From sequence record NC_022096.1: a DNA stretch of 64,000 nucleotides; one strand, written 5' to 3'. The number at the start of each line of letters is the position of its first letter. The stretch's first letter is position 1. The position numbers and the translations under genes are program-made. Shown here piece by piece: positions 13,763 to 52,233 of the stretch. Below the pieces are notes generated by a model. It was given only the letters and a program-made list of their open reading frames with translations. It was not told where the DNA came from and ran no database searches.

Positions 13763-15229
13763 CTAAGCGAGAGCGTAGTCTCCTGCGACTTCTTCCTCTT
13801 CGTCTCCGCTTCGTTTCTTTTTCTTGGATTTCCGAGGCTCATCGTCAGACTCGCTTCGTTTTCCTTTCTTGCCTTTCTTGGACTTGTCGCCTTTCCGTTT
13901 CTTGGAAGGCGCATCTTCTTCGTCATCCTCTGATGAGTAGTCAACCTGCGCATCGGGCATGTTCTCAGCGGTCATGATGTCGTACCGCTCAGCCAGCTCG
14001 AAGTTAAACACCTCACCGTCACGGTCTTTCTCAACCCGAATCGGCAAGATGCGCAGTTCACGTTGCTCTTGCTTGGTGTAGTTCCACTGCCACATGGTGT
14101 CGGCGTGTTCTTTGATACCCTTCGAGTAGCGCAGCTTATCTGTGGTATCGTCCAACTGAGCAAGGATAACCACAAGGCACTTGCTGCCTTCACGACTGAA
14201 TCGCTTGGACACGGCCGCAACTTCGGAGAGCTTGAACCACTGAGACTCGTGGTCCATGCCAGCGAGAAGGCCGATGTAGTCGATCATCACGATCTGGTAG
14301 CTGAACGGCTTGATCATGCGGTACACGTCGTCAATCGACATGGCTCGCGTTGGGCTGATCGTGGTGTAGACGATGCCGTGCTTCTGCCCGTGCTCACTGA
14401 ACAGACGGAAGGCTTCCTTGATCTTGTGCTTGTCGCCGGAGGTGAGCTTGTTCTCCTTAAACTTGTTGAACGGAATCTTCGTCAGGTGCGACGCAAGCCT
14501 TCGTGTCTCTTGTTCCTCGTCCATTTCCAAACTGATCCGACACACGGACTTGTTGGACTTGCGGTAGAGGTAAACACTCAGGTTCATCGCAACGGTCGAT
14601 TTACCACCGGACGTAGTTGCCGAGATAATGAACACGCCATGTTCTGGCAGGCCGCCGTTTCGCTTGTCGTACTCAGCATAGCCAGTCTTGATTCGCGGCT
14701 CGACCGTTCGGTTGATGATGTTGTCCACGATTTGCGCGGACGAGTCATTCGTACCGAAGTTGAGGAAGAACTGGTCATCGGCAAGGCTGGCGTTGGCGCG
14801 GCTCACAGCTTCCGTTACGTCGGAGAGCAGAGAATCAACGTCGATGTCTGGCTTGTCGAGAGCCGCGAAGCTGTCTTGGGCAATCGCGTAAATCGCACGA
14901 ATCTTGCGGTACCGCTCAAGTACATCCAGCAGGTTGCCTATCTGCTTTTTGTTCTTGCACGGCTTGGCCTTTTTAATCTGGGACTTCAATGCGTCCCGCA
15001 GGTCTTCATCGATTACAGGATCGGCAGCCAGGCTGTTGAAGTCAACGATTTCAAATCGCTTCTTGGCCAGGGTGTCGATCCGCTTGAATGCTTCGAGCGT
15101 AGGAGCATTGTGGAAATGCTCCTTACTCAGCTTACCGAGAAGGGTGCTGCGGACGCCAGCAGGGATGGACTCGTCGGTCAGTGTCTTGATGCACCGAACT
15201 TCGGAGTCCTGATCATATAGCAGCGCCAT
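13763..15229 (-). CDS. dnaB: DnaB-like replicative helicase
   Basis: Walker A ISATTSGGKST, ISLEM, MIDYIGL, LAQL motifs; charged K/D/E C-terminal tail. Confidence 0.9.
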   Translation of the reverse strand: MALLYDQDSEVRCIKTLTDESIPAGVRSTLLGKLSKEHFHNAPTLEAFKRIDTLAKKRFEIVDFNSLAADPVIDEDLRDALKSQIKKAKPCKNKKQIGNLLDVLERYRKIRAIYAIAQDSFAALDKPDIDVDSLLSDVTEAVSRANASLADDQFFLNFGTNDSSAQIVDNIINRTVEPRIKTGYAEYDKRNGGLPEHGVFIISATTSGGKSTVAMNLSVYLYRKSNKSVCRISLEMDEEQETRRLASHLTKIPFNKFKENKLTSGDKHKIKEAFRLFSEHGQKHGIVYTTISPTRAMSIDDVYRMIKPFSYQIVMIDYIGLLAGMDHESQWFKLSEVAAVSKRFSREGSKCLVVILAQLDDTTDKLRYSKGIKEHADTMWQWNYTKQEQRELRILPIRVEKDRDGEVFNFELAERYDIMTAENMPDAQVDYSSEDDEEDAPSKKRKGDKSKKGKKGKRSESDDEPRKSKKKKRSGDEEEEVAGDYALA

Positions 15230-15236
15230 GTGTCAG

Positions 15237-15638
15237 TCACTCATCAACCCAGATGGAAAGCTCCGGATACTTCTCGGTAACGGCCTTCACCCAGACGTTC
15301 CAAGGCGCACAGTCCTCGACAACATTCAGGTGAACTACTTGCCGCGTGTTGTTCGACGTCGGATTCATATCCGAGGCCGAGACGCTGCGTCGCTTGTACT
15401 TGTTGATCTTGAGGCGCTTGAACGGCGTCTCAAGAGCACGAACGGCTGCCTCGAAGTCGGGACGGTTGACGACGATGCGGTCGCTAACAATACCGAAGGC
15501 ACGGTTCGTGGTGATGTTTTGATTCTCCTTGACCACTTTGCTGATGTGAAGGAACAGCAGTCGCTTGAAGCTGTCCTCTGTTACACCGCTGAAACAGGCG
15601 AATGCAGCCTTTTCCAGAATCCAAGCGTCGGTACTCAT
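15237..15638 (-). CDS. hypothetical protein
   Basis: 133-aa ORF, coupled to neighbours. Confidence 0.7.
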   Translation of the reverse strand: MSTDAWILEKAAFACFSGVTEDSFKRLLFLHISKVVKENQNITTNRAFGIVSDRIVVNRPDFEAAVRALETPFKRLKINKYKRRSVSASDMNPTSNNTRQVVHLNVVEDCAPWNVWVKAVTEKYPELSIWVDE

Positions 15639-16768
15639 GCAACGCTCCTGTGCTTGATCAATTCAGTTCCAACCTTTCTCAGGAACTTAGTCAGTCTCTC
15701 TTTACACACTCCGAGGTGATCGGCGAGGTGAGGGACCACATTTTCGTGTTTGGTGCGGGAAACAAAATCCGCACAATCTTCATCCAGCTTGATGAACCCA
15801 CGCGCTCGCAGGTAGCGAGTAAAGCGCGAGTCGTCTTGGCCGCTAACGATCAGAATGGCACGACGCCGTACTCGGGACTTTCCAAGTGCGCTGACAACCC
15901 GCTCGAAGTTCAGGTCAGACAGCATCTTGCTGGAGTCGTTTTGGTTCGCCGCGTTAAGCGTACCCTCGTAACTGAAAAGCTCCTCTCCGTCGATCACGGC
16001 GAGTTGGTTCTCAGAAACACAGGTCAGGCTGAAACTCTGCCCGCCGAATCCGTCGCTCCCTGCATTGTTCATGCGACGGCGTTTGTCCGATGTCTTAGCG
16101 CTGATGATGTTGAGCGCGTGGTTGGTGCAGGTCGATCGCAGGTAGTTCAGGATGTGCGCCTGCGACTTATCGGACGGTACCATCATGTAATACGCCTTGA
16201 TGGCTTTGTACAGCAACTCGCCGTTGAAGTCCGAAAACTCCGCGTTCTCGGCGTTGACCAGGAACTTGAGCTTGCGGAAGGTCTTCTGGCGAACGTGCTT
16301 CATCAACTCAGGGTACATATCGTTGAAGTCGCGCTGCGCACGCTCTACGCTGCCTTCTTCGATGTCCTCTGGTTTCAAGGACTTGACCCTTGCGGATTTC
16401 CGCATTGACCTGCGGAACTTCGCATCCTCGAACGCACGGCGCAACAACACCGCGTCATTGCGGACAATCTCGAACGCATTGGCGAAGTGGTGGATGGTGT
16501 CCACGTTCACTGCCGACTTGCAGAGGTTGAGCGCCATGAACTTGACGTTCAAGGTGAAGTACGACTTTTCGATCAGGCTCAGGCGAAAATCTTTTGCGCT
16601 GATGTCCAGATCGCGGAAGCGTACATTGTCTTTCAGGAAATGCTGGTACGCATAAGCATCGCACACGCCACACAGGTAACGGAGCGTCTCCTGTGCAACA
16701 CGGATCGCACGCGGCTGATCCAAGTCCAACTTGAGGACGTGGCGAAGTGCAGAACACAAACTTTCCAT
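15635..16768 (-). CDS. possible sigma-factor-like transcription protein
   Basis: MYPELMKHVRQK..RKL...DFNGELLYKAIKAY....LNYLRSTCTNHALN weakly resembles sigma region 2. Confidence 0.4.
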   Translation of the reverse strand: MESLCSALRHVLKLDLDQPRAIRVAQETLRYLCGVCDAYAYQHFLKDNVRFRDLDISAKDFRLSLIEKSYFTLNVKFMALNLCKSAVNVDTIHHFANAFEIVRNDAVLLRRAFEDAKFRRSMRKSARVKSLKPEDIEEGSVERAQRDFNDMYPELMKHVRQKTFRKLKFLVNAENAEFSDFNGELLYKAIKAYYMMVPSDKSQAHILNYLRSTCTNHALNIISAKTSDKRRRMNNAGSDGFGGQSFSLTCVSENQLAVIDGEELFSYEGTLNAANQNDSSKMLSDLNFERVVSALGKSRVRRRAILIVSGQDDSRFTRYLRARGFIKLDEDCADFVSRTKHENVVPHLADHLGVCKERLTKFLRKVGTELIKHRSVA

Positions 16769-16773
16769 GTTGG

Positions 16774-19388: not shown

Positions 19389-20894
19389 TTACTCGTCGTC
19401 CGCTTCTTCGCTGATGTCATCGGCCTGACGGCCTTTGGTGTTCTCGGCCTTGATCGCCAACTTCAGGAGCTTGTAGCCTTCGCCGGAGCGAACTTGCTTA
19501 CGGCACCATTCGTACAGGCGGAACGGCTTGACCTTGAACTTGGTGCAGCCCTTCTTGATCAGATCGGGCGAACCATCGATCAGTGCCTTGAACTCGATCC
19601 ACGACACGGTCTTGCCTTCGAGCGGACCGGTGAGGAACTTGAGCTTCTTGCGATTGCCGCCGAGCTGCCCAGTGTTCTTGAGGTACTGATAGGCGTCCCA
19701 GACTCGGCAGAAGCCTTTCGCGTTACCATCGGCATCGCTCACGCAGATGCGCAGCGAAATCTCTGCGGCTTGCGGACCGCCGAGCTTGTTCTTGTGCACC
19801 TTGCATTTCAGGTAACGGTACTTGTCAACGCCTTCACCGGTGATGGTGTCTTCTTCCTCGAACTGGCCCTTGGCGTGGGGAACGCTGACCGAGGTCATCT
19901 TGAGGCGGCAGTCAGAGTAGAAACGCAGCGCCTTACCGCCAGGCTCTTGTTCGGTCGGGCCGTACATTGCCATGGGGATGTCACGCAACTGGTTGATGCC
20001 CAGTACGATGATCCGCTTGGAACGCATTGCACCCTTCACGCGCGGCAGGTTTGCAGCGTGCATACGAGCCTGGGCGCCGAGCGACTTGTCACCCTCGTCC
20101 TTATCGTCGGTCTGCTTCGGCACCATTGCCGGGTACGAGTCGACCAGCACGACGGCTTGGGGACTACCGTCGGGCATTTCGATTCGGAACTTGTTGGTCT
20201 TGCGGAAGTATTCCTTGTCGTACACACCGGCGAGTGCTTTCTGGTTCGCTTTGGTGTTCTCGTAGACGCAGTAGAACTTCCCGTTCTCCTGGATTTTGTC
20301 CGGGAGAATCTTTTCGAGCTTGGCGAGGTAGTTGTAGAAGTCCTCGCCGACCGACGGAGCGTAGTAACGAACGCGCGGTTGGATGACCCAGCCTTTGTCG
20401 TCCTTCACGCCGAACACGTTGTCAACGCTCAGACGCTTGCCGTGGTTCATGTAGCGGAAGATGTTCTCGGCGTAGTCGGCCTGGAACGAACCTTCGAAGT
20501 CGTGCAGCGACGCCTTGCCGTGGAACGTGCTGTCGGTTGCGATTGCACCCATGCACGTCGTGGCGAGCGTAGACTTACACGACTGCTCGCCGCCGAAGAA
20601 CGTGTACCAACCACCAGGCAGCAGGCCGCCAGCGAGTGCAACGTCGATGGAAAGCAGGCCAGTGGATAGGCGATCTTCCGATTCGCTAACCGCCATGGAG
20701 GTAAGGCCGAACTTCTTTTCCATGGAATCGATTTCGGCGTCGAGGTGAGCATACGGATCGAACGCAGCTACTGCCGTGTCGCCCTTCTTGCCTTTCTTCG
20801 CGGTACTCACGTCGATTTCGACATCACCGCCCTTGCCTTTGCCGCGCTTGCTCTTTGCGGGAGCGTCGGCTTCGGCCTTTTTCTTCTTTGCCAT
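19389..20894 (-). CDS. recA: RecA-like recombinase
   Basis: YTFFGGEQSCKSTL (variant Walker A), LVDSYPAM, GINQLR, PGGKALRFYSDCRL; start MAKKKK from the GGAG SD. Confidence 0.9.
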   Translation of the reverse strand: MAKKKKAEADAPAKSKRGKGKGGDVEIDVSTAKKGKKGDTAVAAFDPYAHLDAEIDSMEKKFGLTSMAVSESEDRLSTGLLSIDVALAGGLLPGGWYTFFGGEQSCKSTLATTCMGAIATDSTFHGKASLHDFEGSFQADYAENIFRYMNHGKRLSVDNVFGVKDDKGWVIQPRVRYYAPSVGEDFYNYLAKLEKILPDKIQENGKFYCVYENTKANQKALAGVYDKEYFRKTNKFRIEMPDGSPQAVVLVDSYPAMVPKQTDDKDEGDKSLGAQARMHAANLPRVKGAMRSKRIIVLGINQLRDIPMAMYGPTEQEPGGKALRFYSDCRLKMTSVSVPHAKGQFEEEDTITGEGVDKYRYLKCKVHKNKLGGPQAAEISLRICVSDADGNAKGFCRVWDAYQYLKNTGQLGGNRKKLKFLTGPLEGKTVSWIEFKALIDGSPDLIKKGCTKFKVKPFRLYEWCRKQVRSGEGYKLLKLAIKAENTKGRQADDISEEADDE

Positions 20895-20946: not shown

Positions 20947-22158
20947 TTACTCGTCGTCATCATCCCAGGCAGATTTCTTGCCCTTGCCGGATTTCTTCGA
21001 CTTCTTGTCCTTGGTGGATTTGTCGGACTTGGACTTCTTGCCCTTGTCAGACTTCTTGGACTTCTTCGGAGCTTCGTCCTCGTCGTCATCAGACGATTTC
21101 TTGGACTTCTTGGCCTTCTTCTTGGGCTTGTCGTCCTCGTCATCATCGTCGTCCGACTTGGACTTGGACTTCTTGCCCTTCTTCTTGGGCTTGTCATCCT
21201 CGTCCTCGTCGTCATCATCGTCGCTGAACGCCGGCTTGGACTTTTTCTTCTTCTTGGGCTTGTCGTCTTCGTCGTCATCGTCATCGGAGAACGCTTTGGA
21301 CTTCTTCTTGCCCTTCTTGCCTTTCTTCGGCTCGTCATCGTCACCGAGACTGTAGCCGTCACCGTCGTCGTCATCGTCCGGAGTATCACCGCCGACGATT
21401 TCCATGCGCTTGAAGTCTTCCAGCGCTTGCTTGGCGTCCATGCGGCCGGTGACATCGAGCAGGGTTTCGTCGAGCTTCCAGACCAGATATGCCTTCTCGT
21501 CGTCGGTGAGCGGAGTGCGCTCGTCCTTGTCGATGGAATACTTGTCGGTACCCGGAGCCTTCGGCTTGAACTTGACACGAATGTCGCAGCCGTACTTCTC
21601 GTGCGTCACGTCGAACGCTTTCTTGGCGCCGGACTTCTTGTCCTTGGCGGTGTTGCCTTCGCCGATCTCTTGGATACGGCTCGCCATGGTGGAAGTGAAG
21701 CGGCAGACGCGCACCGGAGTCCAGGACTTCGAGCGGATGTCCTTGAAGCCGGACTTCTTCTCTTCCTTGGTGTGCTCTGCCTTCTTGCGCGGCTCATCTT
21801 CCTGCAGCTCGCGGATGATGGCGTTGCCCAGGTAGAAGAACTCGTAGCGAGCGCTGCCGTCCTTGCCGTGAGTCAGGTCGCAGTACGGGCACTTGACTTC
21901 TTTGCCCTTCGCGTCTTTGCGCGGCTCGCCTTCGTGGTTCGGGTCGAACGCGATGCAGTAGCGCGGGATGGTGATTTCTTTCTTTTCCTTACCAGCAAGG
22001 ATGCTGATCCAGTGACGCTTCACTGGCAGAATCTTGCCGGGCAGGCAACGAATCTGCGACCACTCGTCAGCCGGAAACTTGTGCAGTTCGATCACTTCAT
22101 CCAGCTTGACCGAATCCTTGTTACCGGTGCGTGGTTGGAGAGTTCCAAATCCACTCAT
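20947..22158 (-). CDS. single-stranded DNA-binding protein (gp32-like) with long K/D-rich tail
   Basis: CPYC, YLGNAIIREL and GCDIRVKF..GTDKYSI core; about 120-aa DDD/KKK tail; next to recA. Confidence 0.7.
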   Translation of the reverse strand: MSGFGTLQPRTGNKDSVKLDEVIELHKFPADEWSQIRCLPGKILPVKRHWISILAGKEKKEITIPRYCIAFDPNHEGEPRKDAKGKEVKCPYCDLTHGKDGSARYEFFYLGNAIIRELQEDEPRKKAEHTKEEKKSGFKDIRSKSWTPVRVCRFTSTMASRIQEIGEGNTAKDKKSGAKKAFDVTHEKYGCDIRVKFKPKAPGTDKYSIDKDERTPLTDDEKAYLVWKLDETLLDVTGRMDAKQALEDFKRMEIVGGDTPDDDDDGDGYSLGDDDEPKKGKKGKKKSKAFSDDDDDEDDKPKKKKKSKPAFSDDDDDEDEDDKPKKKGKKSKSKSDDDDDEDDKPKKKAKKSKKSSDDDEDEAPKKSKKSDKGKKSKSDKSTKDKKSKKSGKGKKSAWDDDDE

Positions 22159-23718: not shown

Positions 23719-24375
23719 TTACAGGTTCTGCTCCAGAGCAATCTTGGCAAGCGCGATGATGTGCTTGCAGCAGCCTGGTGCCAGACGAGGGTTGGTGAAG
23801 TTGGGTGCTTCGCCGTTGGAGTAGATCAAGCGACTAGCACCGACCGATGCGTTGGCGTACTCGAAGACGTAGACGAAGTTTTCGCAGGTGCACTGTACCA
23901 GCACCTTGTTGTGTCGATTGACTGGTAGCTTGTCGTCGTCACCCATGCCGATGATGTACGTCTCGTGGACTCGGCGCACGCGATTCTGCCGCCAGACATC
24001 GTAGGTGACCATGTGGCCCATGATCACAGGACGATGCGTCTTGGTAAACTTGCGCTCAATCTTCTTGGCTTCAACGTCAACCGCATTGTTGATGAACAGA
24101 CGCGGAGTGGCACGAATCAGTTGACGCAGCGTCATGCCTTTCTTCGACGCAGCAGTCTCAGGCAGTTGTCGGACAGGCATTGCCTCCAAGCGCTTGAGCC
24201 TGTAAGGCATGCCGGACGCCAGACGTTCTTTCCCGGGCCGCTTCGATTTGAACACGACTGCCTTCTTCGACTTCATGCGCTCTTGCGTCTTCTCCGCGGT
24301 GCGCTTGGCATCGGACTTACGCCCTGAGGTGTTCTTGCGACTTTTGGCAAGCGGCTTGTACGGCTTCTTCGCCAT
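23719..24375 (-). CDS. SWIM zinc-finger protein
   Basis: VQCTCENF....CCKHIIAL (CxC..CxH); basic N-terminus. Confidence 0.75.
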   Translation of the reverse strand: MAKKPYKPLAKSRKNTSGRKSDAKRTAEKTQERMKSKKAVVFKSKRPGKERLASGMPYRLKRLEAMPVRQLPETAASKKGMTLRQLIRATPRLFINNAVDVEAKKIERKFTKTHRPVIMGHMVTYDVWRQNRVRRVHETYIIGMGDDDKLPVNRHNKVLVQCTCENFVYVFEYANASVGASRLIYSNGEAPNFTNPRLAPGCCKHIIALAKIALEQNL

Positions 24376-26995: not shown

Positions 26996-27604
26996 TCAAT
27001 CCAGGTCGTCGAAGTCCTCGAAGTCGTCATCCGACTTCGACTTCTTGTCCGCCTTCTTGGACTTCTTGCCTTCGGCTTTTTCAGCCTTGGCCTTCTTGGC
27101 TTTCTTGTCCTTCTTGGACTCGGCCTTGGCCGACTTGTCGGACTTCTTGCCTTCGGCTTTCTCGGCCTTGGCTTTCTTGTCCTTCTTCACCGGCTTGTCG
27201 GCCTTCTCGGCTTTCTTGGACTTCTTGCTGTCGCCCTTGTCAGCCTTGGCTTTCTTGCCTTCGGCCTTCTCGGCCTTGGCCTTCTTGTCGGACTTCTTGC
27301 CTTCGCCCTTGGCCGGCTTGTCAGCCTTCTCGGCTTTCTTGGACTTCTTGCCCTCGGCTTTCTCGGCCTTGGCTTTCTTGTCCTTCTTGGCCGGCTTGTC
27401 AGCCTTGGCCTTCGCCGGAGCGGCGGCGCCGTCAGCAGTCAGCTTCTCGACGGCCTTGATCTGGGCTTGGGTGCCTTTCAGGCTTTCCTGCGCGGTCTTG
27501 AGCGCTTTCTCCAGGGCAGCAACGGTGCCCTTGGCAGCACGTTCTTCCTTACGCAGGCGGGAAACTTCCTGCTTCTTGTTGATGAGTACGTCGTTCTTGG
27601 CCAT
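26996..27604 (-). CDS. histone H1-like Lys/Ala-rich protein
   Basis: Repeats of KKDKKAKAEKAEGKKS after an N-terminal coiled coil; acidic C-terminus DDDFEDFDDLD. Confidence 0.75.
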   Translation of the reverse strand: MAKNDVLINKKQEVSRLRKEERAAKGTVAALEKALKTAQESLKGTQAQIKAVEKLTADGAAAPAKAKADKPAKKDKKAKAEKAEGKKSKKAEKADKPAKGEGKKSDKKAKAEKAEGKKAKADKGDSKKSKKAEKADKPVKKDKKAKAEKAEGKKSDKSAKAESKKDKKAKKAKAEKAEGKKSKKADKKSKSDDDFEDFDDLD

Positions 27605-41981: not shown

Positions 41982-41985
41982 GATG

Positions 41986-43602
41986 TCAGGCAAACTCCAG
42001 GCCAGACTTGTTCTTGTCAGGGTTCTTGAGGTACGACTTGACGCGAGCTTCGGTGTCACGCGCTGCTCGGGCACCCGGGGCCTTGAGGTCTTTGGCGAGC
42101 TGCTTCAATTCGTCCTTGAGCTCCTTGATCTTCTCCTTGAGCGCGGCCGCTTCCAACTTGGCAAGCTGGCGAACTTTTCGGTCGAGGATGATGATCGCGT
42201 CTTCGACCGGAATCTTCAACGCCTTGGCGAGTGCTGCGTTCGGGTCGTTGCTCACCAAAACTTTCGGCAATGCCTTGAGCAGTTGCTCCATGTTCTCGAC
42301 GGCGAACAGGTAGACCTCGTTGATGTGCAGGTCACGCTCAGCGCGCTTGGTCAGATACTTGATCAGCCGCACTTCCAGCTTGGTGCGATAGTTGATCCAC
42401 TTGGTGAAGAAGTCCACGTAGTTCAGGTACTTGAACTCGTTCGCCTCTTCCGCCTTACGGATCGTGACACCCAGGCGGTAGTTCACGGAGCTGGTGGTTG
42501 CCTTCTCAACGGCTTCCACGATGTCAGCGAAGCGATCCTCGCCGACGTTGCGACCGCACTCGACGATGAACAGGGCGCCGTACGGACCAGAGCCCTTCGA
42601 CTTCTTGCCCTGCTTGGAAAAGGTCTTCTTCACGCCGTTGATGGCGCTCAACTTCTCCAGGGTCTTGTCGATGGTCTTGGTCGACGACAGGCCTGCGGGT
42701 ACGAACGAGCGAATCTGGATCGTGCGGGTTTTGAAGTCCGCATTCATCAGCGGTGCGTACACGATGTTGCCGCGGCCGGTCTTGAGCATTTCGGCGAACT
42801 GGCTGCCGGCAGTGATGTCCTCGCAACCGAACGGGTGCTGAATCTTCAACACCTTGGCGAGTTGCTTGGCGTTGAACTCCTTGCCGTTCAGCATATCGAT
42901 GACGACGCGCGCCACAGACTTGAACGAGAAGCTCGGGTTGCCAGCGCGCACGCCGTACGCAGGTGCAGGCACGTTGCCGTTAAACAGCACGTACGGGAGC
43001 AGCGCAGGCAGGAACAGCGGGATCACGTCGTCGCCGGAGAAGTTGGGGACTTTCGGCACGACTTCCAGGTACTTGGTGTCCAGCAGGAACATGTGCGAGA
43101 ACTTCGACATCCGCGCTTCGGTGTAACGCTGTGCGGCTGCCGGGTTGATCGGAGTACCCCAGTTACCCTGACCATCGACAGCAGGCGGCATGGTGTTCGC
43201 AATCGTCACCATCGCACCGTATGCTGCGGCGTCGCCGTGCGGGTGGTACTTACCGATGGTGTCACCGACAGTACGTGCCGACTTCTTGTAGCCGCTCGAC
43301 GGACGCAACGACAGACCAGCGAGCGACCAGAGCAGCGAACGGTGAACTGGCTTCAACCCGTCACGGATGTCAGGCACAGCACGGTCTTCAACCACGTAGC
43401 TGCCGTAGGTGAACATGGCTTCGGCAGTGTACTGATCGATGGTGGTGGTCTGCACGGTGTTTGCTTTCAACGGAAAGCGGTCTTCGGCATGCAGTACCTT
43501 GCCTTTGCCTTTCTTCACCTTCTTGTTGCTGACTTCAATCTGCACGTCAGCAGCAGCAGCGCCGCGGGTTTTTTCTTTCTTGGTTTTCTTGACCTTGGCC
43601 AT
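41986..43602 (-). CDS. gyrA: type IIA topoisomerase subunit A (GyrA/ParC family) lacking the C-terminal pinwheel
   Basis: RAVPDIRDGLKPVHR, KSARTVGD.IGKYHPHGD, AAQRYTEAR; only 538 aa. Confidence 0.92.
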   Translation of the reverse strand: MAKVKKTKKEKTRGAAAADVQIEVSNKKVKKGKGKVLHAEDRFPLKANTVQTTTIDQYTAEAMFTYGSYVVEDRAVPDIRDGLKPVHRSLLWSLAGLSLRPSSGYKKSARTVGDTIGKYHPHGDAAAYGAMVTIANTMPPAVDGQGNWGTPINPAAAQRYTEARMSKFSHMFLLDTKYLEVVPKVPNFSGDDVIPLFLPALLPYVLFNGNVPAPAYGVRAGNPSFSFKSVARVVIDMLNGKEFNAKQLAKVLKIQHPFGCEDITAGSQFAEMLKTGRGNIVYAPLMNADFKTRTIQIRSFVPAGLSSTKTIDKTLEKLSAINGVKKTFSKQGKKSKGSGPYGALFIVECGRNVGEDRFADIVEAVEKATTSSVNYRLGVTIRKAEEANEFKYLNYVDFFTKWINYRTKLEVRLIKYLTKRAERDLHINEVYLFAVENMEQLLKALPKVLVSNDPNAALAKALKIPVEDAIIILDRKVRQLAKLEAAALKEKIKELKDELKQLAKDLKAPGARAARDTEARVKSYLKNPDKNKSGLEFA

Positions 43603-45618
43603 TTAGTCCTCCAGACCCAGCAGACGGCGACGGTATACAGCATCTTCTGCAACGACGCCACGGAACCAGAGTTCTTGCTCGTGGTTGGCGAACGGATTGA
43701 TGCGAATGAGATTGCGGTGTTCAGGCGAGAACGCGATCGGTTCTAGGAAAGTCTCATCGACCTCACCCCAGCCCTTGATGCGAACGATGTCCTTGTCCTT
43801 GACTGCCTTGGGTGCGGCTTTACGGCACTCATCGAAGGTCATGCCACCGTAGAGTTTGCCGTCATGGAGCACAGCATACAGCGGAGCCTTGACGCACCAG
43901 ACGCGGCCTTCTTTGAACAGGTCTGGCAGCAGTCGGTAGATCGCCGCTAGGAACAGTACGGCAATGTGCCCACCATCCGGGTCCGGATCGACCAGGAAGA
44001 TGATGTTGCCAGTACGCAGATTGTCGGTCGACAGACGCGGGTTCTCAGCTTTCGGATCGAGCGTCTTGATGTCGGCGCCCAGGCTGATGAGCATGTTCTG
44101 GATTTCTTCGTGACCCAGAATCTTCGCCAGGGTCGCTTTCAGTGCGTTCAGTGGCTTACCGCCAGCACCCAGCACTTCCTGATAGTTCGCGTCTCGGGCG
44201 TCGATTGCAGTACCTGCGGCCGAGTCACCCTCAACGATGAACAGCTCGCGCTCATGTGGCTTGGCCTTGTCGGCGACAGCAAGTGCGCTCGGCAGACTGG
44301 AGCCCTTGATCGACTTCTTCGCGTCAGCCATGGACTTGACGACAGCAGCGAGTTCTTCACGGCCCTTGTTCATCACCAGTGCGCGCTTGATGATGGTCTT
44401 CGCAACGCGCTGGTTGGCTTTGAAGTACTCCTCGAACACTGGCAGCATTGCCTCGTGAACTTCGCGGTCGACCTTCGAAGCCAGCTTGTCTTTCACCTGC
44501 GAGGTGTACTGGGCGCCGTGCATACGCCAGTCAAACATACCAACCAGACCGATCAGCAGGTCAGAACCAGAGAATCCATTGCCGCCTTTCTTCTTGCCCT
44601 TGGGCTGAGTCATGTACGGCTTGATCGCAGCCATCAGGGCGCTGGTAAATCCGGTGACGTGCCAGCCACCATCGACAGTCGGCGACGTGTTCACGAACGT
44701 CAGGAAGTGGTCGGCATCCGGATGGTCAGCCCACACGACAGAGCAACTGATGTTGTCGGTCTTGAACGTCATGGGCTTGCCGATCATGCCCAGTTCGCGT
44801 TCCTCACACATTGCCTTGGGTACCCAAGCCAAGTCCTTCTTGTTCAGGAAGGTAAACGCTTTGGTCTTGCCGCCCTTGATGACCTTGAAGCGAATCTCCA
44901 GACCTGGGTTCAGGTTCGCCATGTTCTTCAACCACATGGCAATCGGCTTGGCCTGGGGCGAGGCATGCACATAATCTTTCGGCAGGGCCTTACCACGACG
45001 GGCAGACTCAGACACGACGGTCTGGTCGAGCTTGCCCGCGATGATGGTGCCGTACTTGCTCTGCTTCATCGACAGGCGCGAGGCCACGTCCTTGTCGATG
45101 CTCTTGACCTTGATCGGGTCTTTACCCTTGGTTGTGATTTCGCCTTTCGAGAACGACTGGAAGGCGCACTTGCCGTTGTACATACTCCAGACACGCAACT
45201 CCTCGCACACGGCGTTCACCGCCGCAACACCAACGCCGTGAGTACCGGCCGAAGTCTTGTACGAATCGGAGTTGAACTTGCCACCTGCGTGGGCGCGAGA
45301 GAACGCGGCCGTCATGATGGTCTCTTTCGTCCCGTCTTTCAACTTCTTGTAGTCGGTCGGGATACCGCCAGCAGCGTCGGCGACGATGTGGAAGTCGGCG
45401 TCGTAGTCGAGGATGACCTCGATCAACTTGTTACGACCGGCGATGGCCTCGTCGTATGCGTTGTCTACCTCTTCCTTGATGACACGGTACGCCATGTCAT
45501 GACCGAGGTTACCCAAGTACATCGTGGGGTTTATACGGATGCCTTGGAGGCCCTCCGCGATGACGAAGCCCTCCTGAGAGGCAGACTTCTTCCCCTTCTT
45601 GATCTTTTCCTTAGCCAT
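43603..45618 (-). CDS. gyrB: type IIA topoisomerase subunit B (GyrB/ParE family)
   Basis: EEVDNAYDE, SAGTHGVG, LFIVEGDSA, VDPDPDGGHI, RIKGWGE. Confidence 0.92.
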   Translation of the reverse strand: MAKEKIKKGKKSASQEGFVIAEGLQGIRINPTMYLGNLGHDMAYRVIKEEVDNAYDEAIAGRNKLIEVILDYDADFHIVADAAGGIPTDYKKLKDGTKETIMTAAFSRAHAGGKFNSDSYKTSAGTHGVGVAAVNAVCEELRVWSMYNGKCAFQSFSKGEITTKGKDPIKVKSIDKDVASRLSMKQSKYGTIIAGKLDQTVVSESARRGKALPKDYVHASPQAKPIAMWLKNMANLNPGLEIRFKVIKGGKTKAFTFLNKKDLAWVPKAMCEERELGMIGKPMTFKTDNISCSVVWADHPDADHFLTFVNTSPTVDGGWHVTGFTSALMAAIKPYMTQPKGKKKGGNGFSGSDLLIGLVGMFDWRMHGAQYTSQVKDKLASKVDREVHEAMLPVFEEYFKANQRVAKTIIKRALVMNKGREELAAVVKSMADAKKSIKGSSLPSALAVADKAKPHERELFIVEGDSAAGTAIDARDANYQEVLGAGGKPLNALKATLAKILGHEEIQNMLISLGADIKTLDPKAENPRLSTDNLRTGNIIFLVDPDPDGGHIAVLFLAAIYRLLPDLFKEGRVWCVKAPLYAVLHDGKLYGGMTFDECRKAAPKAVKDKDIVRIKGWGEVDETFLEPIAFSPEHRNLIRINPFANHEQELWFRGVVAEDAVYRRRLLGLED

Positions 45619-48892: not shown

Positions 48893-49954
48893 ATGGCAAA
48901 CAAATCAATCACGAAAGCGCGCAGCCCGCTTGCTACCAAAGGTGACAAGAACAAGGTCGTGGAAAAAGACCCGGGCATCATTGTCGATGACCTGACTCAC
49001 GTCCTTGAAGAGTTGCAGGAGTACGGAGGCCGCACGAAGCAGATGGGCTCTAACGTCCATGTGCTCTGTCCATTCCACGGCGAGAAGACGCCGTCATGTT
49101 CAATCAACCTGAGTCGCGAGGCTGACGTTCCGATCGGTGCGTTCTTCTGCTTCGGTTGCGGTGAGAAAGGCGCCTGGAACAAGTTTGCCAACCAGACTGG
49201 GTTGAAGAAGCTCAAGAAGTGGCAGCAGTTTGAATCAAACACCGACGGCGGAAAGCTGCGATTCTCGAAGCGGCAGATCGAGTTGATGGGCGCGAACAAC
49301 ATGTCCATCCAACGGTTGTTCGATGAGGTCGGTAACGCTGTAATCCCGTGGCCGCCTGAGCGTAAATGGCGTTCGTACTCAGGGAAGTTGATCAGCCGCA
49401 TCGGTGGGTATTGCTACAACGACGACCATCGCGATGAGCTGATGTTGGTGTTTCCTGTTTACACTAACGGCAGGTACCGTGGCGGTGTTCGGGCCTTCTT
49501 TGAGAAGCAAGACAATGGCTTGTCGTACCTGACGACCAAAGGCGACTGGGTAAAGTCGTACGGGCTGCTTGGGTACGACTACATGATGAAGAAGGACCTG
49601 TGGGGTTGCAAGAGCATCGTCCTTGTTGAAGGTCCGCGTGACTGGTTGCGCCTTGTGAAGAACAAGATTCCGTCTTGCGGTATTCTCGGTTCCAACATGT
49701 TTGACGCGAAGAAGTTGCAACTCCTCGTGGCGTTGGGAATCAAGAAAATCTTCGTCATGCCGGATAACGACAGAGCAGGCAAAAAGATGGCGAATCTGGT
49801 GAAAGGGTTCGCCAAGGAATTTGGCATAGACTGCGAGTATCTGAAACTGCCTCGTCCGATCAACGAGAAAGGCGAAGTGGTAAAACTCGACCCAGACAAC
49901 TGCGACCAGAAGATCATCGACAAGGTGAAAGAGCTGGTGTACGCGGTACGGTGA
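48893..49954 (+). CDS. dnaG: DNA primase (DnaG-like)
   Basis: CPFHGEKTPSC..FCFGC zinc finger; TOPRIM VEGPRD and PDNDRAG. Confidence 0.9.
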   Translation: MANKSITKARSPLATKGDKNKVVEKDPGIIVDDLTHVLEELQEYGGRTKQMGSNVHVLCPFHGEKTPSCSINLSREADVPIGAFFCFGCGEKGAWNKFANQTGLKKLKKWQQFESNTDGGKLRFSKRQIELMGANNMSIQRLFDEVGNAVIPWPPERKWRSYSGKLISRIGGYCYNDDHRDELMLVFPVYTNGRYRGGVRAFFEKQDNGLSYLTTKGDWVKSYGLLGYDYMMKKDLWGCKSIVLVEGPRDWLRLVKNKIPSCGILGSNMFDAKKLQLLVALGIKKIFVMPDNDRAGKKMANLVKGFAKEFGIDCEYLKLPRPINEKGEVVKLDPDNCDQKIIDKVKELVYAVR

Positions 49955-50229: not shown

Positions 50230-50234
50230 TACTG

Positions 50235-50257: not shown

Positions 50258-50297
50258 ATGGCCTGCGGAAAGTCCACAAACTATTCGGTGGAGACCT

Positions 50298-50328
50298 AAA
50301 AAAGGGAGAGCACATGCTCTCCCTTTTT
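50298..50328. terminator. bidirectional intrinsic terminator
   Basis: A6-GGGAGAGC-ACAT-GCTCTCCC-T5 between convergent genes. Confidence 0.85.
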
Positions 50329-50346
50329 GTTTGGCGCTGGATGGGA

Positions 50347-50988: not shown

Positions 50989-51532
50989 GATGAGAGGTCC
51001 TCGTTTTGGTGAAAGCATCGACCACTGTCTCCAACTCCTTTGGCGTCCACCTGAACAGCAGATGAATGGCGAAGCGATTGAAGTCTGGGACGATTCGGTT
51101 TGCGTACTCAGGGTTGAGCACAAATGGGAGCATCCAGACTTGAATGTCCAAATGCTTTATACGGAACAGCTTACTGCGGAAGGACTTCTTCAACAACTGC
51201 TTGGCTTCGCTCGGAAGCTGCCGCATCATGTGAGAGTTTAGTCCATGCTCAGGCCGCTCGTTATTCTGAACGTGCCGAACAACTTGGTTGAGCGCAAGCA
51301 CTGCCTGCACTCGACTTACTGCTCGCTTCCGTATGGAAGCGACTTCCCGTTGGCTGTGGTTCGGGAACTTAAAGATCACCAGCTCGGCGTCGCTCATGCT
51401 CTTGTCATTTGCGGCAAAGCTGGTGTCCATACTCAGGCAACGACTCGGTGTCTTCTCGTTGTACATCTTGCACGTGGCGATTCGACACTGGGTCTTGAAG
51501 CGGTATGCGTCGTGAAGTGGGCATTGTTTCAT
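50975..51532 (-). CDS. hypothetical Cys-containing protein
   Basis: 185 aa; CTGTAAA motif at 51572-51578. Confidence 0.7.
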   Translation of the reverse strand: MKQCPLHDAYRFKTQCRIATCKMYNEKTPSRCLSMDTSFAANDKSMSDAELVIFKFPNHSQREVASIRKRAVSRVQAVLALNQVVRHVQNNERPEHGLNSHMMRQLPSEAKQLLKKSFRSKLFRIKHLDIQVWMLPFVLNPEYANRIVPDFNRFAIHLLFRWTPKELETVVDAFTKTRTSHRGQG

Positions 51533-51594
51533 GGCAAATCTCCATAGACACCTTGGTGTCCCTGGGATGCCTTTACAGTTTGCCTACAAACTCC

Positions 51595-52233
51595 TTAGGA
51601 CTTCCGCCGGCGCTTCTTGGTCTTTTTCTGCTTGGGTAAATGCGCAGGCAGAAAGTTGATCGGAGGTGCAGAGGACAATGCCTTGAGTAGTTTCGCCTCT
51701 TTCTCGCGTGTATCGATGAAGGAGAAAGGACGCACACCCAGCAGCTTGCAGCCGACGTAGATGCCGAGCAACATCGAATCCAGTTGGTGGATGGCGATCT
51801 TGGTCAGCTTCTCTTTACGCAGGTCAGCAAGGTCAAGGTACATTTCCTTCAGGTCGGCGTATCGATTGAACTCGTTCTTCCACACACCTGCCGTGATGAA
51901 GTCGGCGTTCTTGATGTGGTTAGACTGCTGAGCCATGCAGCCCAACATGCAGTTCACGGACTCAATCGTTGGACCTTTACCGCCACGAGCTTGGAAGCGC
52001 TCTGCTACAAACGCATCCAGATTCTCAACCTCGAACAACGGTTGGACGTAATCGCGGAACGTATTCAACGAACTCCGCATGGTCTTCATATCTTTCAGCA
52101 GACGCTGCGGATCAAGCATCGTCGTGCCTTCGCACTTGAACTGGAATCGGTTGTTTGCCCATCGCAAGCGCATGATCGACACTGCGAAATTGGATGTTCC
52201 TGGGTCCATTGCGAGAATGCGCAGATCAGTCAT
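51595..52233 (-). CDS. ruvC: RuvC-like Holliday junction resolvase
   Basis: ILAMDPGTSNFAVS, FVAERFQ, HQLDSML; AGGAG SD. Confidence 0.85.
   Translation of the reverse strand: MTDLRILAMDPGTSNFAVSIMRLRWANNRFQFKCEGTTMLDPQRLLKDMKTMRSSLNTFRDYVQPLFEVENLDAFVAERFQARGGKGPTIESVNCMLGCMAQQSNHIKNADFITAGVWKNEFNRYADLKEMYLDLADLRKEKLTKIAIHQLDSMLLGIYVGCKLLGVRPFSFIDTREKEAKLLKALSSAPPINFLPAHLPKQKKTKKRRRKS

What the first reader, a model, noticed from the sequence alone, without database searches (positions are those of the whole stretch)
13763..52233. Lys-rich and acidic disordered tags on many DNA-processing enzymes
Seen: otherwise ordinary enzymes carry added charged termini. Examples: helicase C-terminus (DDEEDAPSKKRKGDKSKKGKKGKR..KKKKRSGDEEEE), RecA N-terminus (MAKKKK..KSKRGKGKG..KKGKKG), SSB tail (about 120 aa of alternating DDDD and KKGKK blocks), GyrA (MAKVKKTKKEK..KKVKKGKGK), GyrB (MAKEKIKKGKK), RuvC C-terminus (KQKKTKKRRRKS) and the kinase's acidic N-terminus. 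Outside this span, TerL (MKIKKGK) and the PD-(D/E)xK nuclease (KKGKRKRKFKK) have them too. The same genome encodes hyper-acidic and histone-like proteins. Established: blocky polyampholyte disordered regions promote liquid-liquid phase separation, and bacterial homologues of these enzymes generally lack such tags. Inference: a charge-based addressing system that concentrates the replisome and packaging machinery in a condensate-like phage replication compartment. No shell protein was recognisable in this window.
Basis: partly seen in the sequence, partly recalled or inferred. Interest (0 to 1): 0.8.

Follow-up and report, generated by a model that had tools for sequence, protein, structure and literature searches.

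The report
Charged tails on phage replication enzymes
In the jumbo phage PaBG and its whole clade, most enzymes that handle DNA carry conserved, disordered lysine-rich or alternating acid/lysine end-pieces. These most likely act as electrostatic tethers that gather the replication machinery on phage DNA; a droplet-like compartment is possible but unproven.

Summary
The window is Pseudomonas phage PaBG, record positions 62001-126000.

- **Not chance.** Across 315 PaBG proteins, a terminal K/R-dense patch occurs on 10 of 28 DNA-processing proteins but on 1 of 59 structural or metabolic ones (p = 3e-5). Shuffling each protein's own residues predicts about 3.
- **Conserved as a trait, not a sequence.** All 120 listed SSB homologues have a long blocky acid/lysine tail. 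Of 120 topoisomerase II-A homologues, 108 have an N-terminal extension of at least 20 residues (median K/R 28%). The RuvC tag sits at the C-terminus in PaBG's subclade and at the N-terminus elsewhere.
- **Conserved cassette.** A three-gene group travels with the enzymes: a K-tailed beta-rich protein, a hyper-acidic protein and an H1-like protein.
- **Protein-level feature.** Lysine codons in the tags follow normal genome usage.

Best reading: non-specific electrostatic tethers to DNA or other polyanions, plus a gp32-type SSB whose disordered polyampholyte tail serves as a recruiting hub. Lysine-rich tails on DNA enzymes are a known kind; tagging of a whole enzyme suite appears unreported in the papers I searched. 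The condensate "addressing" idea is compatible but untested, and nucleotide-metabolism and transcription proteins are untagged, which favours direct DNA contact.

The parts
13763..15229 (-). gp110, DnaB-like replicative helicase. Its C-terminal tail (residues 426-488, nt 13763-13954) is a near-neutral blocky polyampholyte ending in a short acidic/aromatic tip.
   Evidence: Pfam DnaB_C covers 180-415 of 488. It extends about 50 aa beyond DnaB structures. Charge segregation z = 7.4. Lu11 and HRDY3 orthologues also carry K-block tails.
19389..20894 (-). gp116, RecA/UvsX-like recombinase. It has an N-terminal K-rich tag (nt 20775-20894) and an acidic C-terminal tip (nt 19389-19427).
   Evidence: Pfam RecA. 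Only the core, residues 247-337, aligns with RecA structures. The K-rich N-terminus and acidic tip are present in Lu11, HRDY3, Yoloswag and fHe-Yen9-02.
20947..22158 (-). gp117, gp32-type SSB. The core is residues 1-255. The 148-aa tail (nt 20947-21393) consists of alternating acidic and lysine blocks and ends with an aromatic residue plus an acidic tip.
   Evidence: PHROG 15004 SSB. AF2 gives pLDDT 82-93 for the core and 43-56 with no secondary structure for the tail. Foldseek matches RB69/T4 gp32 cores at E = 1e-5. Tail composition is f+ 0.32 and f- 0.34, with z = 11.4. A 63-nt degenerate repeat occurs about 3 times. All 120 listed homologues have such tails.
23719..24375 (-). gp120, of unknown function. 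The first 52 residues are K/R-rich (nt 24220-24375).
   Evidence: Orthologues Lu11 gp169 and HRDY3 XDJ15122 carry the same kind of N-terminus. PHROG 18980, function unknown.
26996..27604 (-). gp124, with an N-terminal helical segment of about 60 aa, then about 130 aa of well-mixed K/A/E repeats (31% K) and an acidic/aromatic tip. H1-like.
   Evidence: Its charges are well mixed rather than blocky (z = -0.3). Orthologues are Lu11 gp165, HRDY3 XDJ15126 and Yoloswag gp323, in the same gene order.
27794..28246 (-). gp125, the hyper-acidic protein. It has a K-rich N-terminus, a short helical segment, then about 105 residues of almost pure D/E ending with an aromatic residue.
   Evidence: Orthologues are Lu11 gp164 (67% D/E), HRDY3 XDJ15127 and Yoloswag gp322. 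No family hit.
28349..28933 (-). gp126, with a basic N-terminal helix, an all-beta core (residues 41-150), a K-rich linker and an acidic tip with one leucine that is invariant or nearly so (nt 28349-28486 for tail plus tip).
   Evidence: In alignment A2 of 32 homologues, D190, D191 and L192 are invariant and D193 and D194 are at least 90% conserved. AF2 pLDDT exceeds 90 for the core and falls below 50 for residues 153-189. No significant PDB fold match.
32328..33650 (-). gp131, of unknown function, with a basic block (about residues 58-140) followed by long acidic blocks (205-352).
   Evidence: Charge segregation z = 11.1. Lu11 gp157 and HRDY3 XDJ15134 resemble it at the N-terminus.
35646..36071 (-). 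gp136, with an N-terminal helical part and an A/K/P-repeat tail (nt 35646-35861). H1/AlgP-like.
   Evidence: Only weak coiled-coil hits. Orthologues are Lu11 gp154 and HRDY3 XDJ15136.
41986..43602 (-). gp146, type IIA topoisomerase subunit A (ParC/GyrA-like, without the GyrA C-terminal domain). The N-terminal K-rich tag is about 45 aa (nt 43468-43602).
   Evidence: Pfam DNA_topoisoIV covers 74-507. It extends about 42 aa beyond GyrA and about 47 aa beyond the T4 medium subunit. Of 120 homologues, 108 have an N-extension of at least 20 aa, with median K/R 0.28.
43603..45618 (-). gp147, type IIA topoisomerase subunit B (GyrB/ParE-like). Its short N-terminal K tag is nt 45568-45618.
   Evidence: Pfam DNA_gyraseB, Toprim and HATPase_c. 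The tag is longer (about 45 aa) in Lu11 and HRDY3 and about 20 aa in Yoloswag.
A K block followed by a long acidic block occupies residues 38-125 (nt 47404-47667).
   Evidence: PHROG 4182, function unknown. No PDB or NCBIfam support for a kinase.
48893..49954 (+). gp153, DnaG-type primase. It has a mildly basic N-terminal extension of about 25 aa (nt 48893-48967). Lu11 and HRDY3 orthologues instead carry C-terminal K tags.
   Evidence: Pfam Zn_ribbon_DnaG and Toprim. Termini compared.
51595..52233 (-). gp156, RuvC-like Holliday junction resolvase. The C-terminal K/R tag is nt 51595-51639.
   Evidence: PHROG 18317 covers residues 1-192 only. The tag is C-terminal in the PaBG subclade and N-terminal in the Lu11 subclade and beyond, across about 15 loci.
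10799..12961 (-). gp108, large terminase. It has a very short basic N-terminus (first 7-11 residues, nt 12929-12961).
   Evidence: The same short basic start is present in Lu11 and HRDY3 TerL. This is the weakest example.
62689..63192 (+). gp312, a TnsA/Vsr-like PD-(D/E)xK endonuclease. The N-terminal K/R tag is nt 62710-62760.
   Evidence: Pfam DUF7487 and Tn7_TnsA-like_N. It has 10 K/R in one 15-residue window.
60606..60843 (+). Phage tRNA-Lys(ttt), tRNA-Asp(gtc) and tRNA-Lys(ttt). These may supply the residues that the tags over-use (circumstantial).
   Evidence: ARAGORN and the record's annotation. Lysine is 6.1% of the phage proteome.

Best explanation
The lysine/arginine-rich termini are disordered, position-independent electrostatic tethers. 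The PaBG/Lu11/Erwinia-Dickeya jumbo-phage clade keeps them on the proteins that work directly on DNA.

Two classes can be told apart.
- **Class 1, purely cationic tags.** These sit on topoisomerase II A and B, the RecA N-terminus, RuvC, nuclease gp312, gp120 and, outside the window, ParB, SbcC and Pol I. They most likely bind DNA or other polyanions non-specifically. That would raise the enzymes' local concentration and dwell time on phage DNA, as the lysine repeats of actinobacterial TopA and Ku do.
- **Class 2, near-neutral tails with segregated charges and an acidic tip.** These sit on SSB, the helicase and gp126; K-rich gp124 also ends in such a tip but is net-positive and well mixed. The gp32-fold SSB carries a 148-residue linker of alternating acidic and lysine blocks ending in an acidic/aromatic tip. 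I read this as a much more highly charged counterpart of the bacterial SSB linker-plus-tip and of the gp32 acidic domain. It would act as a multivalent hub whose acidic blocks and tip bind the cationic tags or basic patches of partner enzymes.

Shown here: presence, terminal position, enrichment, predicted disorder, charge patterning, conservation and swapping between termini. Inferred: DNA binding, the hub function and any higher-order assembly.
For: - **Enrichment.** 10 of 28 DNA-processing proteins are tagged against 1 of 59 structural or metabolic ones (p = 2.8e-5). Within-protein shuffles predict 3.0.
- **Position.** K/R-dense windows are 6.2 times denser at termini.
- **Untagged classes.** None of 20 metabolic and none of 4 transcription proteins are tagged, which points to direct DNA contact rather than a general address.
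- **Conservation without sequence conservation.**
  - SSB: 120 of 120 tails are at least 60 aa; 117 have at least 25% K/R and at least 20% D/E.
  - Topo II-A: 108 of 120 have an N-terminal extension of at least 20 aa.
  - RecA, helicase, topo II-B and gp120 are tagged in Lu11, HRDY3 and the Erwinia/Yersinia phages sampled.
- **Terminus swaps** in RuvC and primase show selection for having a tag, not for a particular structure.
- **Protein-level selection.** Tag lysine codons are mostly AAG, like the genome (73% AAG).
- **SSB.** gp32 fold, tail predicted disordered, charge segregation z = 11.4. Tips are acidic plus aromatic in 53 of 120 homologues and end in Pro-Phe in 12. Pro-Phe are the two most conserved residues of the bacterial SSB tip (PMC10018359).
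- **gp126.** The acidic tip is invariant or nearly so, as expected of a short linear binding motif.
- **Precedent.** Lysine-rich low-complexity regions in DNA proteins bind DNA non-specifically (PMC6821194). Lysine repeats give Streptomyces TopA high processivity (PMC5714199), and lysine repeats modulate DNA binding by Ku (PMC3553676).
Against: - No binding, localisation or expression data exist for any of these proteins. All mechanistic steps are inferred from sequence.
- DNA-binding proteins tend to be basic in general, and my functional classes come from the record's annotation.
- Two of the ten 'tagged' DNA proteins (DprA-like, MmcB-like) have arginine-rich patches that may be part of a fold.
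- Some DNA enzymes are untagged: the 5'-3' exonuclease, the clamp, and Cas4-like gp152 in PaBG.
- 29 of 120 SSB homologues end in a basic stretch, not an acidic one, so a tip-based hub cannot be universal.
- Hyper-acidic gp125 carries a K tag although it should not bind DNA, which simple DNA tethering does not explain.
- K-rich N-termini also occur on about a quarter of distant phage topo II-A proteins, so the trait is not exclusive to this clade.
Confidence: 0.55

Rival explanations
1. The tags are address labels that partition the replisome and packaging machinery into a charge-driven, membraneless condensate, a shell-less replication compartment. The scaffold would be the polyampholyte SSB tail, the H1-like proteins (gp124, gp136), hyper-acidic gp125 and phage DNA.
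For: - The SSB and helicase tails are blocky and near-neutral (z = 11.4 and 7.4).
- E. coli SSB forms condensates through its disordered linker and concentrates its partners (PMC7584906).
- A syntenic cassette of K-tailed, hyper-acidic and H1-like proteins is conserved from Pseudomonas to Erwinia phages.
- gp125 is a polyanion carrying its own K tag, which fits a polyelectrolyte network better than plain DNA binding does.
- No shell-protein family was recognised in the window or among 9 large hypothetical proteins.
- The phage relies on a sigma factor and hence on host RNA polymerase. Its DNA must therefore stay accessible, which is compatible with an open compartment.
Against: - No compartment has been described for PaBG or its relatives in the papers searched.
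- None of 20 metabolic enzymes and none of 4 transcription proteins carry tags, and the TerL tag is only 7-11 residues. A general address label would be expected more widely.
- Tag length varies from 8 to 77 residues within one orthologous group.
- Everything seen is equally explained by DNA tethering.
- Charge blockiness predicts only a propensity to demix, not demixing in a cell.
Confidence: 0.22
2. The cationic tags are ligands for acidic proteins rather than for DNA. They would dock onto the acidic blocks of the SSB tail, onto gp125, or onto acidic tips, forming fuzzy polyelectrolyte complexes like a linker histone with its acidic chaperone. Recruitment would then be protein-protein only.
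For: - Acidic tips are invariant or nearly so in gp126, and acidic tips are frequent on SSB.
- Hyper-acidic gp125 is conserved next to K-rich gp124 in four phages.
- The bacterial SSB tip recruits at least 17 partners (PMC10018359).
Against: - 29 of 120 SSB homologues end basic.
- Known SSB-tip partners use folded pockets, not disordered tags (PMC10018359).
- Lysine tails on TopA and Ku act on DNA.
- The two modes are not mutually exclusive.
Confidence: 0.12
3. The tags have no function of their own. One possibility is neutral low-complexity expansion by replication slippage. Another is an mRNA-level or expression effect, such as A-rich codons after the start or a solubility-enhancing 'bristle'.
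For: - The SSB tail contains a degenerate 63-nt tandem repeat, and gp124 contains 42-51-nt repeats, so slippage or duplication built them.
- Eleven PaBG proteins start with Met-Ala-Lys.
- AAA is enriched in codons 2-10 genome-wide (48% against 27%).
Against: - The tags persist in composition across homologues down to about 46% core identity, while their sequence and length change.
- They are enriched by function.
- They move between termini.
- They use AAG like the rest of the genome: 41 of 48 Lys codons in the SSB tail and 6 of 6 in the gp147 tag.
- Many are C-terminal or 40-150 residues long.
Confidence: 0.05
4. The tags are signals for packaging the proteins into the capsid, or for ejecting them with the DNA.
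For: The 1969-aa helicase-like protein is a virion protein (Table 1 of PMC7412058), and it has a weakly basic C-terminus.
Against: None of the tagged enzymes or gp124-126 is among the 14 virion proteins identified. That list covers only abundant bands, so the evidence is weak.
Confidence: 0.03

Closest known systems
Lysine-repeat tails of actinobacterial topoisomerase I and Ku, and lysine-rich low-complexity regions of DNA-binding proteins in general (PMC5714199, PMC3553676, PMC6821194)
   Same: - Lineage-specific, disordered, lysine-rich terminal extensions on otherwise ordinary DNA enzymes.
- Composition is conserved but sequence is not.
- The documented role is non-specific DNA binding and higher processivity.
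   Different: - Here the trait covers a whole suite of proteins in one virus clade: helicase, recombinase, both topoisomerase II subunits, resolvase, nucleases, ParB, SbcC and Pol I.
- The tags sit at either terminus and swap between termini.
- They co-occur with polyampholyte tails and a hyper-acidic protein.
- No biochemistry exists for the phage proteins.
Bacterial SSB tail: disordered linker plus conserved acidic tip, a hub for partner proteins and a driver of condensates (PMC10018359, PMC7584906)
   Same: - A DNA-binding core followed by a disordered tail and an acidic tip containing a hydrophobic or aromatic residue.
- 12 of 120 homologues end in Pro-Phe, as the bacterial tip does.
- Tail length and sequence vary while disorder is kept.
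   Different: - The core is a gp32 fold, not the bacterial OB tetramer.
- The linker is about 66% charged and strongly blocky, whereas bacterial linkers are described as 'none highly charged' (PMC10018359).
- About a quarter of the homologues end basic.
T4/RB69 gp32 (core plus acidic C-terminal domain)
   Same: - The core fold matches (Foldseek E = 1e-5, probability 1.0).
- From my own knowledge, gp32 has an acidic C-terminal domain that binds replisome partners.
   Different: - The PaBG tail is about three times longer and alternates acidic with lysine blocks, so it is net neutral.
- Sequence identity to gp32 cores is only 13-15%.
Histone H1-like proteins of bacteria, such as P. aeruginosa AlgP (PMC9239181)
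   Same: - gp136, gp124 and the out-of-window protein at record 139631-140629 have A/K/P- or K/A/E-repeat tails of the same compositional type.
- AlgP associates with a polyanion (polyphosphate granules) and with the nucleoid.
   Different: - No detectable homology.
- The phage proteins carry an N-terminal helical segment.
- gp124 carries an acidic/aromatic tip.
- Any link to polyphosphate is untested, and the 'polyphosphate kinase' annotated in Lu11 has no family support.
Chimallin-bounded phage nucleus (Chimalliviridae)
   Same: A jumbo phage of Pseudomonas that may organise its replication spatially.
   Different: - No shell-protein family was recognised.
- PaBG is placed far from the phiKZ-like phages and uses a sigma factor instead of phage multisubunit RNA polymerases (PMC7412058).
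- The chimallin survey paper's main text does not mention PaBG, Lu11 or Yoloswag (PMC12625630).
- From my own knowledge, import into that nucleus does not use simple charged tags.
Linker histone with a hyper-acidic chaperone (prothymosin-alpha or nucleoplasmin type polyelectrolyte pairs). This is a resemblance from my own knowledge.
   Same: A K-rich disordered protein (gp124) and an almost pure D/E protein (gp125) are encoded side by side and are conserved together.
   Different: The resemblance is in composition only. No homology or interaction has been shown.

Membership tests
Lysine-rich low-complexity DNA-binding tails (actinobacterial TopA/Ku type) | A lysine-rich, low-complexity extension at a terminus of a DNA-processing enzyme, outside the catalytic domain | tested here: met
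   Domain limits against tags. K/R-dense windows are 6.2 times denser at termini.
Lysine-rich low-complexity DNA-binding tails (actinobacterial TopA/Ku type) | Lineage-specific: absent from orthologues in other lineages, with composition conserved and sequence not conserved | tested here: met
   GyrA, ParC, the T4 subunit and DnaB structures lack the extensions. Of the clade's topo II-A homologues, 108 of 120 have the extension, with variable sequence. The basic-patch frequency falls from 10 of 14 above 40% identity to 33 of 129 below it.
Lysine-rich low-complexity DNA-binding tails (actinobacterial TopA/Ku type) | The tail binds DNA non-specifically and raises affinity or processivity | not testable with these tools
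   This needs biochemical description of the purified proteins.
SSB linker-plus-acidic-tip hub | An ssDNA-binding core followed by an intrinsically disordered C-terminal linker | tested here: met
   The core has the gp32 fold. Tail pLDDT is 43-56 with no secondary structure. All 120 homologues have tails of at least 60 aa.
SSB linker-plus-acidic-tip hub | A conserved acidic C-terminal tip with a hydrophobic or aromatic residue | tested here: inconclusive
   Among 120 homologues, 53 tips are acidic plus aromatic, 12 end in Pro-Phe, 7 are acidic only, 29 are basic and 19 are other. The feature is met in PaBG itself.
SSB linker-plus-acidic-tip hub | The tip or tail recruits partner enzymes | not testable with these tools
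   No interaction data are available.
Blocky polyampholyte disordered regions that drive phase separation | A high fraction of charged residues, near-zero net charge and strong segregation of opposite charges | tested here: met
   SSB tail: f+ 0.32, f- 0.34, z = 11.4. Helicase tail: z = 7.4. gp124 does not meet the feature (z = -0.3).
Blocky polyampholyte disordered regions that drive phase separation | Demixing observed in vitro or in cells | not testable with these tools
   No imaging or biophysical data exist for PaBG or its relatives in the searched literature.
Chimallin phage nucleus (Chimalliviridae) | A shell protein (ChmA) is encoded | tested here: inconclusive
   No such family was hit among the window's proteins or 9 large hypothetical proteins. 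I could not confirm that the libraries hold a chimallin model. The main text of PMC12625630 does not mention this clade.
Chimallin phage nucleus (Chimalliviridae) | Phage multisubunit RNA polymerases that make transcription independent of the host enzyme | tested here: not met
   The window encodes a sigma-70-type factor (gp118). PMC7412058 describes sigma factors only and places PaBG far from the phiKZ-like phages.
   gp146 is 538 aa and aligns only with the N-terminal part (to about residue 400-480) of GyrA chains of about 880 aa. Its best matches are ParC and the T4 medium subunit.
Polyphosphate-based organisation (phage polyphosphate kinase plus K-rich clients) | A phage-encoded polyphosphate kinase | tested here: not met
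   Lu11 gp158 ('putative polyphosphate kinase') and its HRDY3 counterpart hit no Pfam family. No clear PaBG counterpart was seen.

The most novel reading that the evidence does not exclude
The clade builds a shell-less, charge-driven replication compartment. Phage DNA, H1-like polycations (gp124, gp136), a hyper-acidic polyanion (gp125) and the polyampholyte SSB tail would form a complex coacervate. The lysine tags would be the partition signals that admit phage enzymes, and possibly exclude untagged host nucleases. This would be an electrostatic alternative to the chimallin nucleus.
Probability: 0.2. Interest if true: 0.85.

Novelty: new variant of a known kind. Interest (0 to 1): 0.6.

Why it matters
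Lysine-rich tails on single DNA enzymes are known. Here a large, widespread clade of jumbo phages keeps such tags on nearly a whole replication, recombination and topology suite. I found hundreds of relatives on metagenomic contigs, many of 200-316 kb. The tags are kept even though their sequence, their length and sometimes their terminus change.

The clade also keeps three other things:
- an unusually highly charged, blocky SSB tail;
- a conserved cassette of K-rich and hyper-acidic proteins;
- in PaBG, its own tRNA-Lys (two copies) and tRNA-Asp.

That pattern means the charge itself is under selection at the level of the system.

If the tags turn out to be only DNA tethers, this is a clean natural example of modular affinity tags evolving in a virus. 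If they organise a membraneless factory, it would be a second, independent answer to how jumbo phages compartmentalise replication. It would also come with a simple sequence signature that can be searched for in metagenomes.

Tried and rejected
- **mRNA-level or translation-enhancer explanation: rejected.** Tags use AAG like the genome, and many are C-terminal or long.
- **Neutral slippage: rejected as a sufficient cause.** Degenerate repeats exist, but the trait is conserved and tied to function.
- **Polyphosphate link through a phage kinase: not supported.** The Lu11 'polyphosphate kinase' and its HRDY3 counterpart have no Pfam hit. gp127 has no family hit either.
- **'Kinase' identity of gp151: not supported.** The only signal is PHROG 4182 of unknown function. 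There is no PDB or NCBIfam match beyond low-complexity noise.
- **Fold of the gp126 core: no result.** The AF2 model is confident but has no significant PDB match. The best hit has E = 0.012 and TM 0.23-0.31, to a tandem SH3-like cell-wall-binding domain.
- **Shell protein: not found.** Pfam scans of 9 large hypothetical PaBG proteins gave nothing relevant. This is not conclusive.
- **Single-protein scan of viral contigs with RuvC: too narrow.** It found only close relatives, so an alignment query was needed.
- **Literature: nothing found.** The PaBG genome paper, a jumbo-phage comparative-genomics paper and a 2026 jumbo-phage review do not mention charged tags, histone-like proteins, disorder or condensates for this clade. 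A full-text search on phage, phase separation, replication compartment and lysine-rich found nothing on it either.
- **Annotation 'DNA topoisomerase' for gp113: no Pfam support**.

Full report
**Identity of the window.** The window is 100% identical to Pseudomonas phage PaBG (Baikalvirus, 258,139 bp), record positions 62001-126000. From about 8.3 kb to 52.3 kb it carries, on the minus strand, the packaging and replication module. The genes in order are portal, TerL, DnaB-like helicase, RecA/UvsX-like recombinase, SSB, a sigma factor, a run of unknown genes, a 5'-3' exonuclease, the two topoisomerase II subunits, a Cas4-like nuclease, primase (plus strand) and RuvC. Pfam and PHROGs confirm the enzyme identities.

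**The observation.**
- The DnaB_C domain ends at residue 415 of 488. DnaB structures end about 50 residues before the phage protein does.
- Topoisomerase subunit A has about 42 extra N-terminal residues relative to full-length GyrA chains and about 47 relative to the T4 medium subunit. It lacks the GyrA C-terminal domain, so 'gyrase' is a misnomer.
- The SSB has a confidently modelled core (pLDDT 82-93) that matches RB69/T4 gp32 cores (Foldseek E = 1e-5). Its 148-residue tail has pLDDT 43-56 and no secondary structure.
- The tail is 32% K/R and 34% D/E and is net neutral. Opposite charges are far more segregated than in 2000 shuffles (z = 11.4). The helicase tail behaves the same way (z = 7.4), whereas K-rich gp124 is well mixed (z = -0.3).

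**Is it more than chance?** I translated all 315 annotated PaBG proteins that lie whole within one fetched piece of the record, piece by piece. A protein counted as tagged if any 15-residue window within its terminal 40 residues held at least 7 K/R.
- DNA-processing proteins: 10 of 28 tagged.
- Structural plus metabolic proteins: 1 of 59 tagged (Fisher p = 2.8e-5).
- All other proteins: 18 of 287 tagged (p = 2.7e-5).
- Shuffling each protein's own residues predicts 3.0 +/- 1.5 tagged DNA proteins, and none of 300 shuffles reaches 10.
- In that class, K/R-dense windows are 6.2 times denser at termini than in interiors.
- Tagged DNA proteins also occur outside the window: ParB-like, SbcC and, more weakly, Pol I and the giant helicase. 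The effect therefore follows function, not genome position.
- None of 20 metabolic enzymes and none of 4 transcription proteins are tagged.

**Conservation.** It is not met.
- **SSB.** All 120 listed homologues, down to about 46% core identity and many on 200-316 kb contigs, have tails of at least 60 residues (median 150). Of these, 117 have at least 25% K/R and at least 20% D/E, and all have at least four alternating charge blocks.
- **Topoisomerase II-A.** Of 120 homologues, 108 have an N-terminal extension of at least 20 residues (median 44, median K/R 0.28), with no sequence conservation and lengths from 8 to 77 residues.
- **Outgroup trend.** Among cluster representatives, a basic N-terminal patch is present in 10 of 14 at 40% identity or more, but in 33 of 129 below that. 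The trait is characteristic of the wider clade and only sporadic beyond it.
- **Other enzymes.** Lu11, HRDY3, Yoloswag and fHe-Yen9-02 carry the same kinds of tags on RecA and topoisomerase II (the latter not checked in fHe-Yen9-02). Lu11 and HRDY3 also carry them on the helicase and gp120.
- **RuvC.** The K/R tag is C-terminal in PaBG's subclade and N-terminal in the Lu11 subclade and beyond. Every one of about 15 distinct loci examined has a tag at one end or the other.
- **Primase.** It shows a similar switch. PaBG has a mildly basic N-terminal extension, whereas Lu11 and HRDY3 have a C-terminal K tag.
- **Cassette.** The three genes gp126 / gp125 / gp124 keep their order in Lu11, HRDY3 and Yoloswag. 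They encode a K-tailed beta-rich protein, a hyper-acidic protein and an H1-like K/A/E-rich protein.

**What the tags are not.**
- They are not an A-rich start-region effect. Lysine codons in the tags are mostly AAG, like the genome (73%), although codons 2-10 genome-wide do favour AAA.
- They are not mere slippage debris. Degenerate 63-nt and 42-51-nt repeats show how the tails grew, but the trait is maintained over long divergence.
- Nothing supports a packaging signal, because none of these proteins is among the 14 abundant virion proteins. Nothing supports a chimallin-type shell. The phage uses a sigma factor and is placed far from the phiKZ-like phages.
- A link to polyphosphate through a phage kinase is not supported.

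**Most likely mechanism.** Two classes can be separated.
- **Purely cationic tags.** These sit on topoisomerase II A and B, RecA, RuvC, the gp312 nuclease, gp120, ParB and SbcC. They match a documented kind: lysine-rich low-complexity tails that bind DNA non-specifically and raise affinity or processivity (PMC6821194; PMC5714199 and PMC3553676).
- **Near-neutral tails with segregated charges and acidic tips.** These sit on SSB, the helicase and gp126; K-rich gp124 also ends in such a tip but is net-positive and well mixed.
  - They resemble the linker-plus-tip design of bacterial SSB, whose acidic tip recruits at least 17 partners and whose linker drives condensation (PMC10018359, PMC7584906).
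  - Among the phage SSB homologues, 53 tips are acidic with an aromatic residue. Twelve end in Pro-Phe, the two most conserved residues of the bacterial tip.
  - The acidic tip of gp126 is invariant or nearly so in 32 homologues.
  - The difference is the charge. Bacterial linkers are described as 'none highly charged', whereas this tail is about two-thirds charged.
- **Inference.** I infer a multivalent electrostatic network. Cationic tags would bind DNA and the acidic blocks or tips, and the SSB tail would act as the hub. Whether this network stays a set of tethers or demixes into a compartment cannot be decided from sequence.
  - The absence of tags on metabolic and transcription proteins favours direct DNA contact.
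  - The K-tagged hyper-acidic protein and the conserved cassette keep the condensate reading alive.

**Novelty.** The component, a lysine tail on a DNA enzyme, is known. I found no mention of the following in the PaBG genome paper, a jumbo-phage comparative paper, a 2026 review or a full-text search:
- clade-wide tagging of a whole enzyme suite;
- switching of a tag between termini;
- the extreme polyampholyte tail on a gp32-type SSB;
- the K-rich / hyper-acidic cassette.

I rate the finding a new variant of a known kind.

**Limits.**
- Functional classes rest on the public annotation.
- Two of the ten tagged DNA proteins are borderline arginine-rich cases.
- N-terminal tags in metagenomic loci depend on the choice of start codon.
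- No experimental data exist for any of these proteins.

Noticed in passing
window 58228-60843: The phage tRNA cluster holds Thr(tgt), Ala(tgc), Lys(ttt), Asp(gtc) and Lys(ttt). Two tRNA-Lys and one tRNA-Asp match the residues the charged tails over-use, and the phage proteome is 6.1% Lys.
   Followed up: partly
window 28349-28933 (gp126) and alignment A2: The family has a C-terminal acidic tip with one leucine. Three columns are invariant and two are at least 90% conserved in 32 homologues. The confidently modelled all-beta core has no significant PDB fold match. It looks like a short linear binding motif on a protein of unknown function.
   Followed up: partly
L005 8316-10826; L006 8292-11795; L011 41027-43957; L012 6216-9113: The RecA-like genes of Yoloswag (836 aa) and fHe-Yen9-02 (1167 aa) are much longer than PaBG's 501 aa. 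The TerL genes of Lu11 (976 aa) and HRDY3 (965 aa) are much longer than PaBG's 720 aa. These are probably inteins or inserted domains.
   Followed up: no
L012 39079-40670: HRDY3 topoisomerase II subunit A is annotated as two overlapping CDS. The gene is either split or frameshifted, or there is a sequencing error.
   Followed up: no
L002 28631-29629 (PaBG record 139631-140629): This 332-aa protein of unknown function has K-rich regions at both ends and an A/K/P-repeat C-terminus. It is a third H1-like protein, outside the window.
   Followed up: no
window 20975-21327: The SSB tail contains a degenerate 63-nt (21-aa) tandem unit, about 3 copies at 77-81% match. Each unit encodes one acidic block plus one lysine block, so the tail grew by unit duplication.
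   Followed up: partly
window 16774-17406 (gp113); window 47787-48836 (gp152): gp113 is annotated 'DNA topoisomerase' but hits no Pfam family. gp152, annotated 'CRISPR/Cas system associated', is a PD-(D/E)xK nuclease. It lacks the C-terminal K tag that its Lu11 and HRDY3 orthologues carry.
   Followed up: partly
window 23719-24375 (gp120): The basic N-terminal 52 residues are followed by a conserved C-terminal region with a Cys/His pattern. The pattern is shared with Lu11 gp169 and an HRDY3 protein. It may be a zinc-binding nucleic-acid-binding protein.
   Followed up: no
L002 37541-43450 (PaBG record 148541-154450): The 1969-aa 'DNA helicase' is listed as a virion protein (band 1) in the PaBG proteome table. 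Such a protein may be ejected with the DNA.
   Followed up: no
L023-L032 (RuvC loci): The N-terminal RuvC tags of the Lu11 subclade have two basic clusters separated by about 10 residues. That layout resembles a bipartite nuclear localisation signal, but this is a resemblance only.
   Followed up: no
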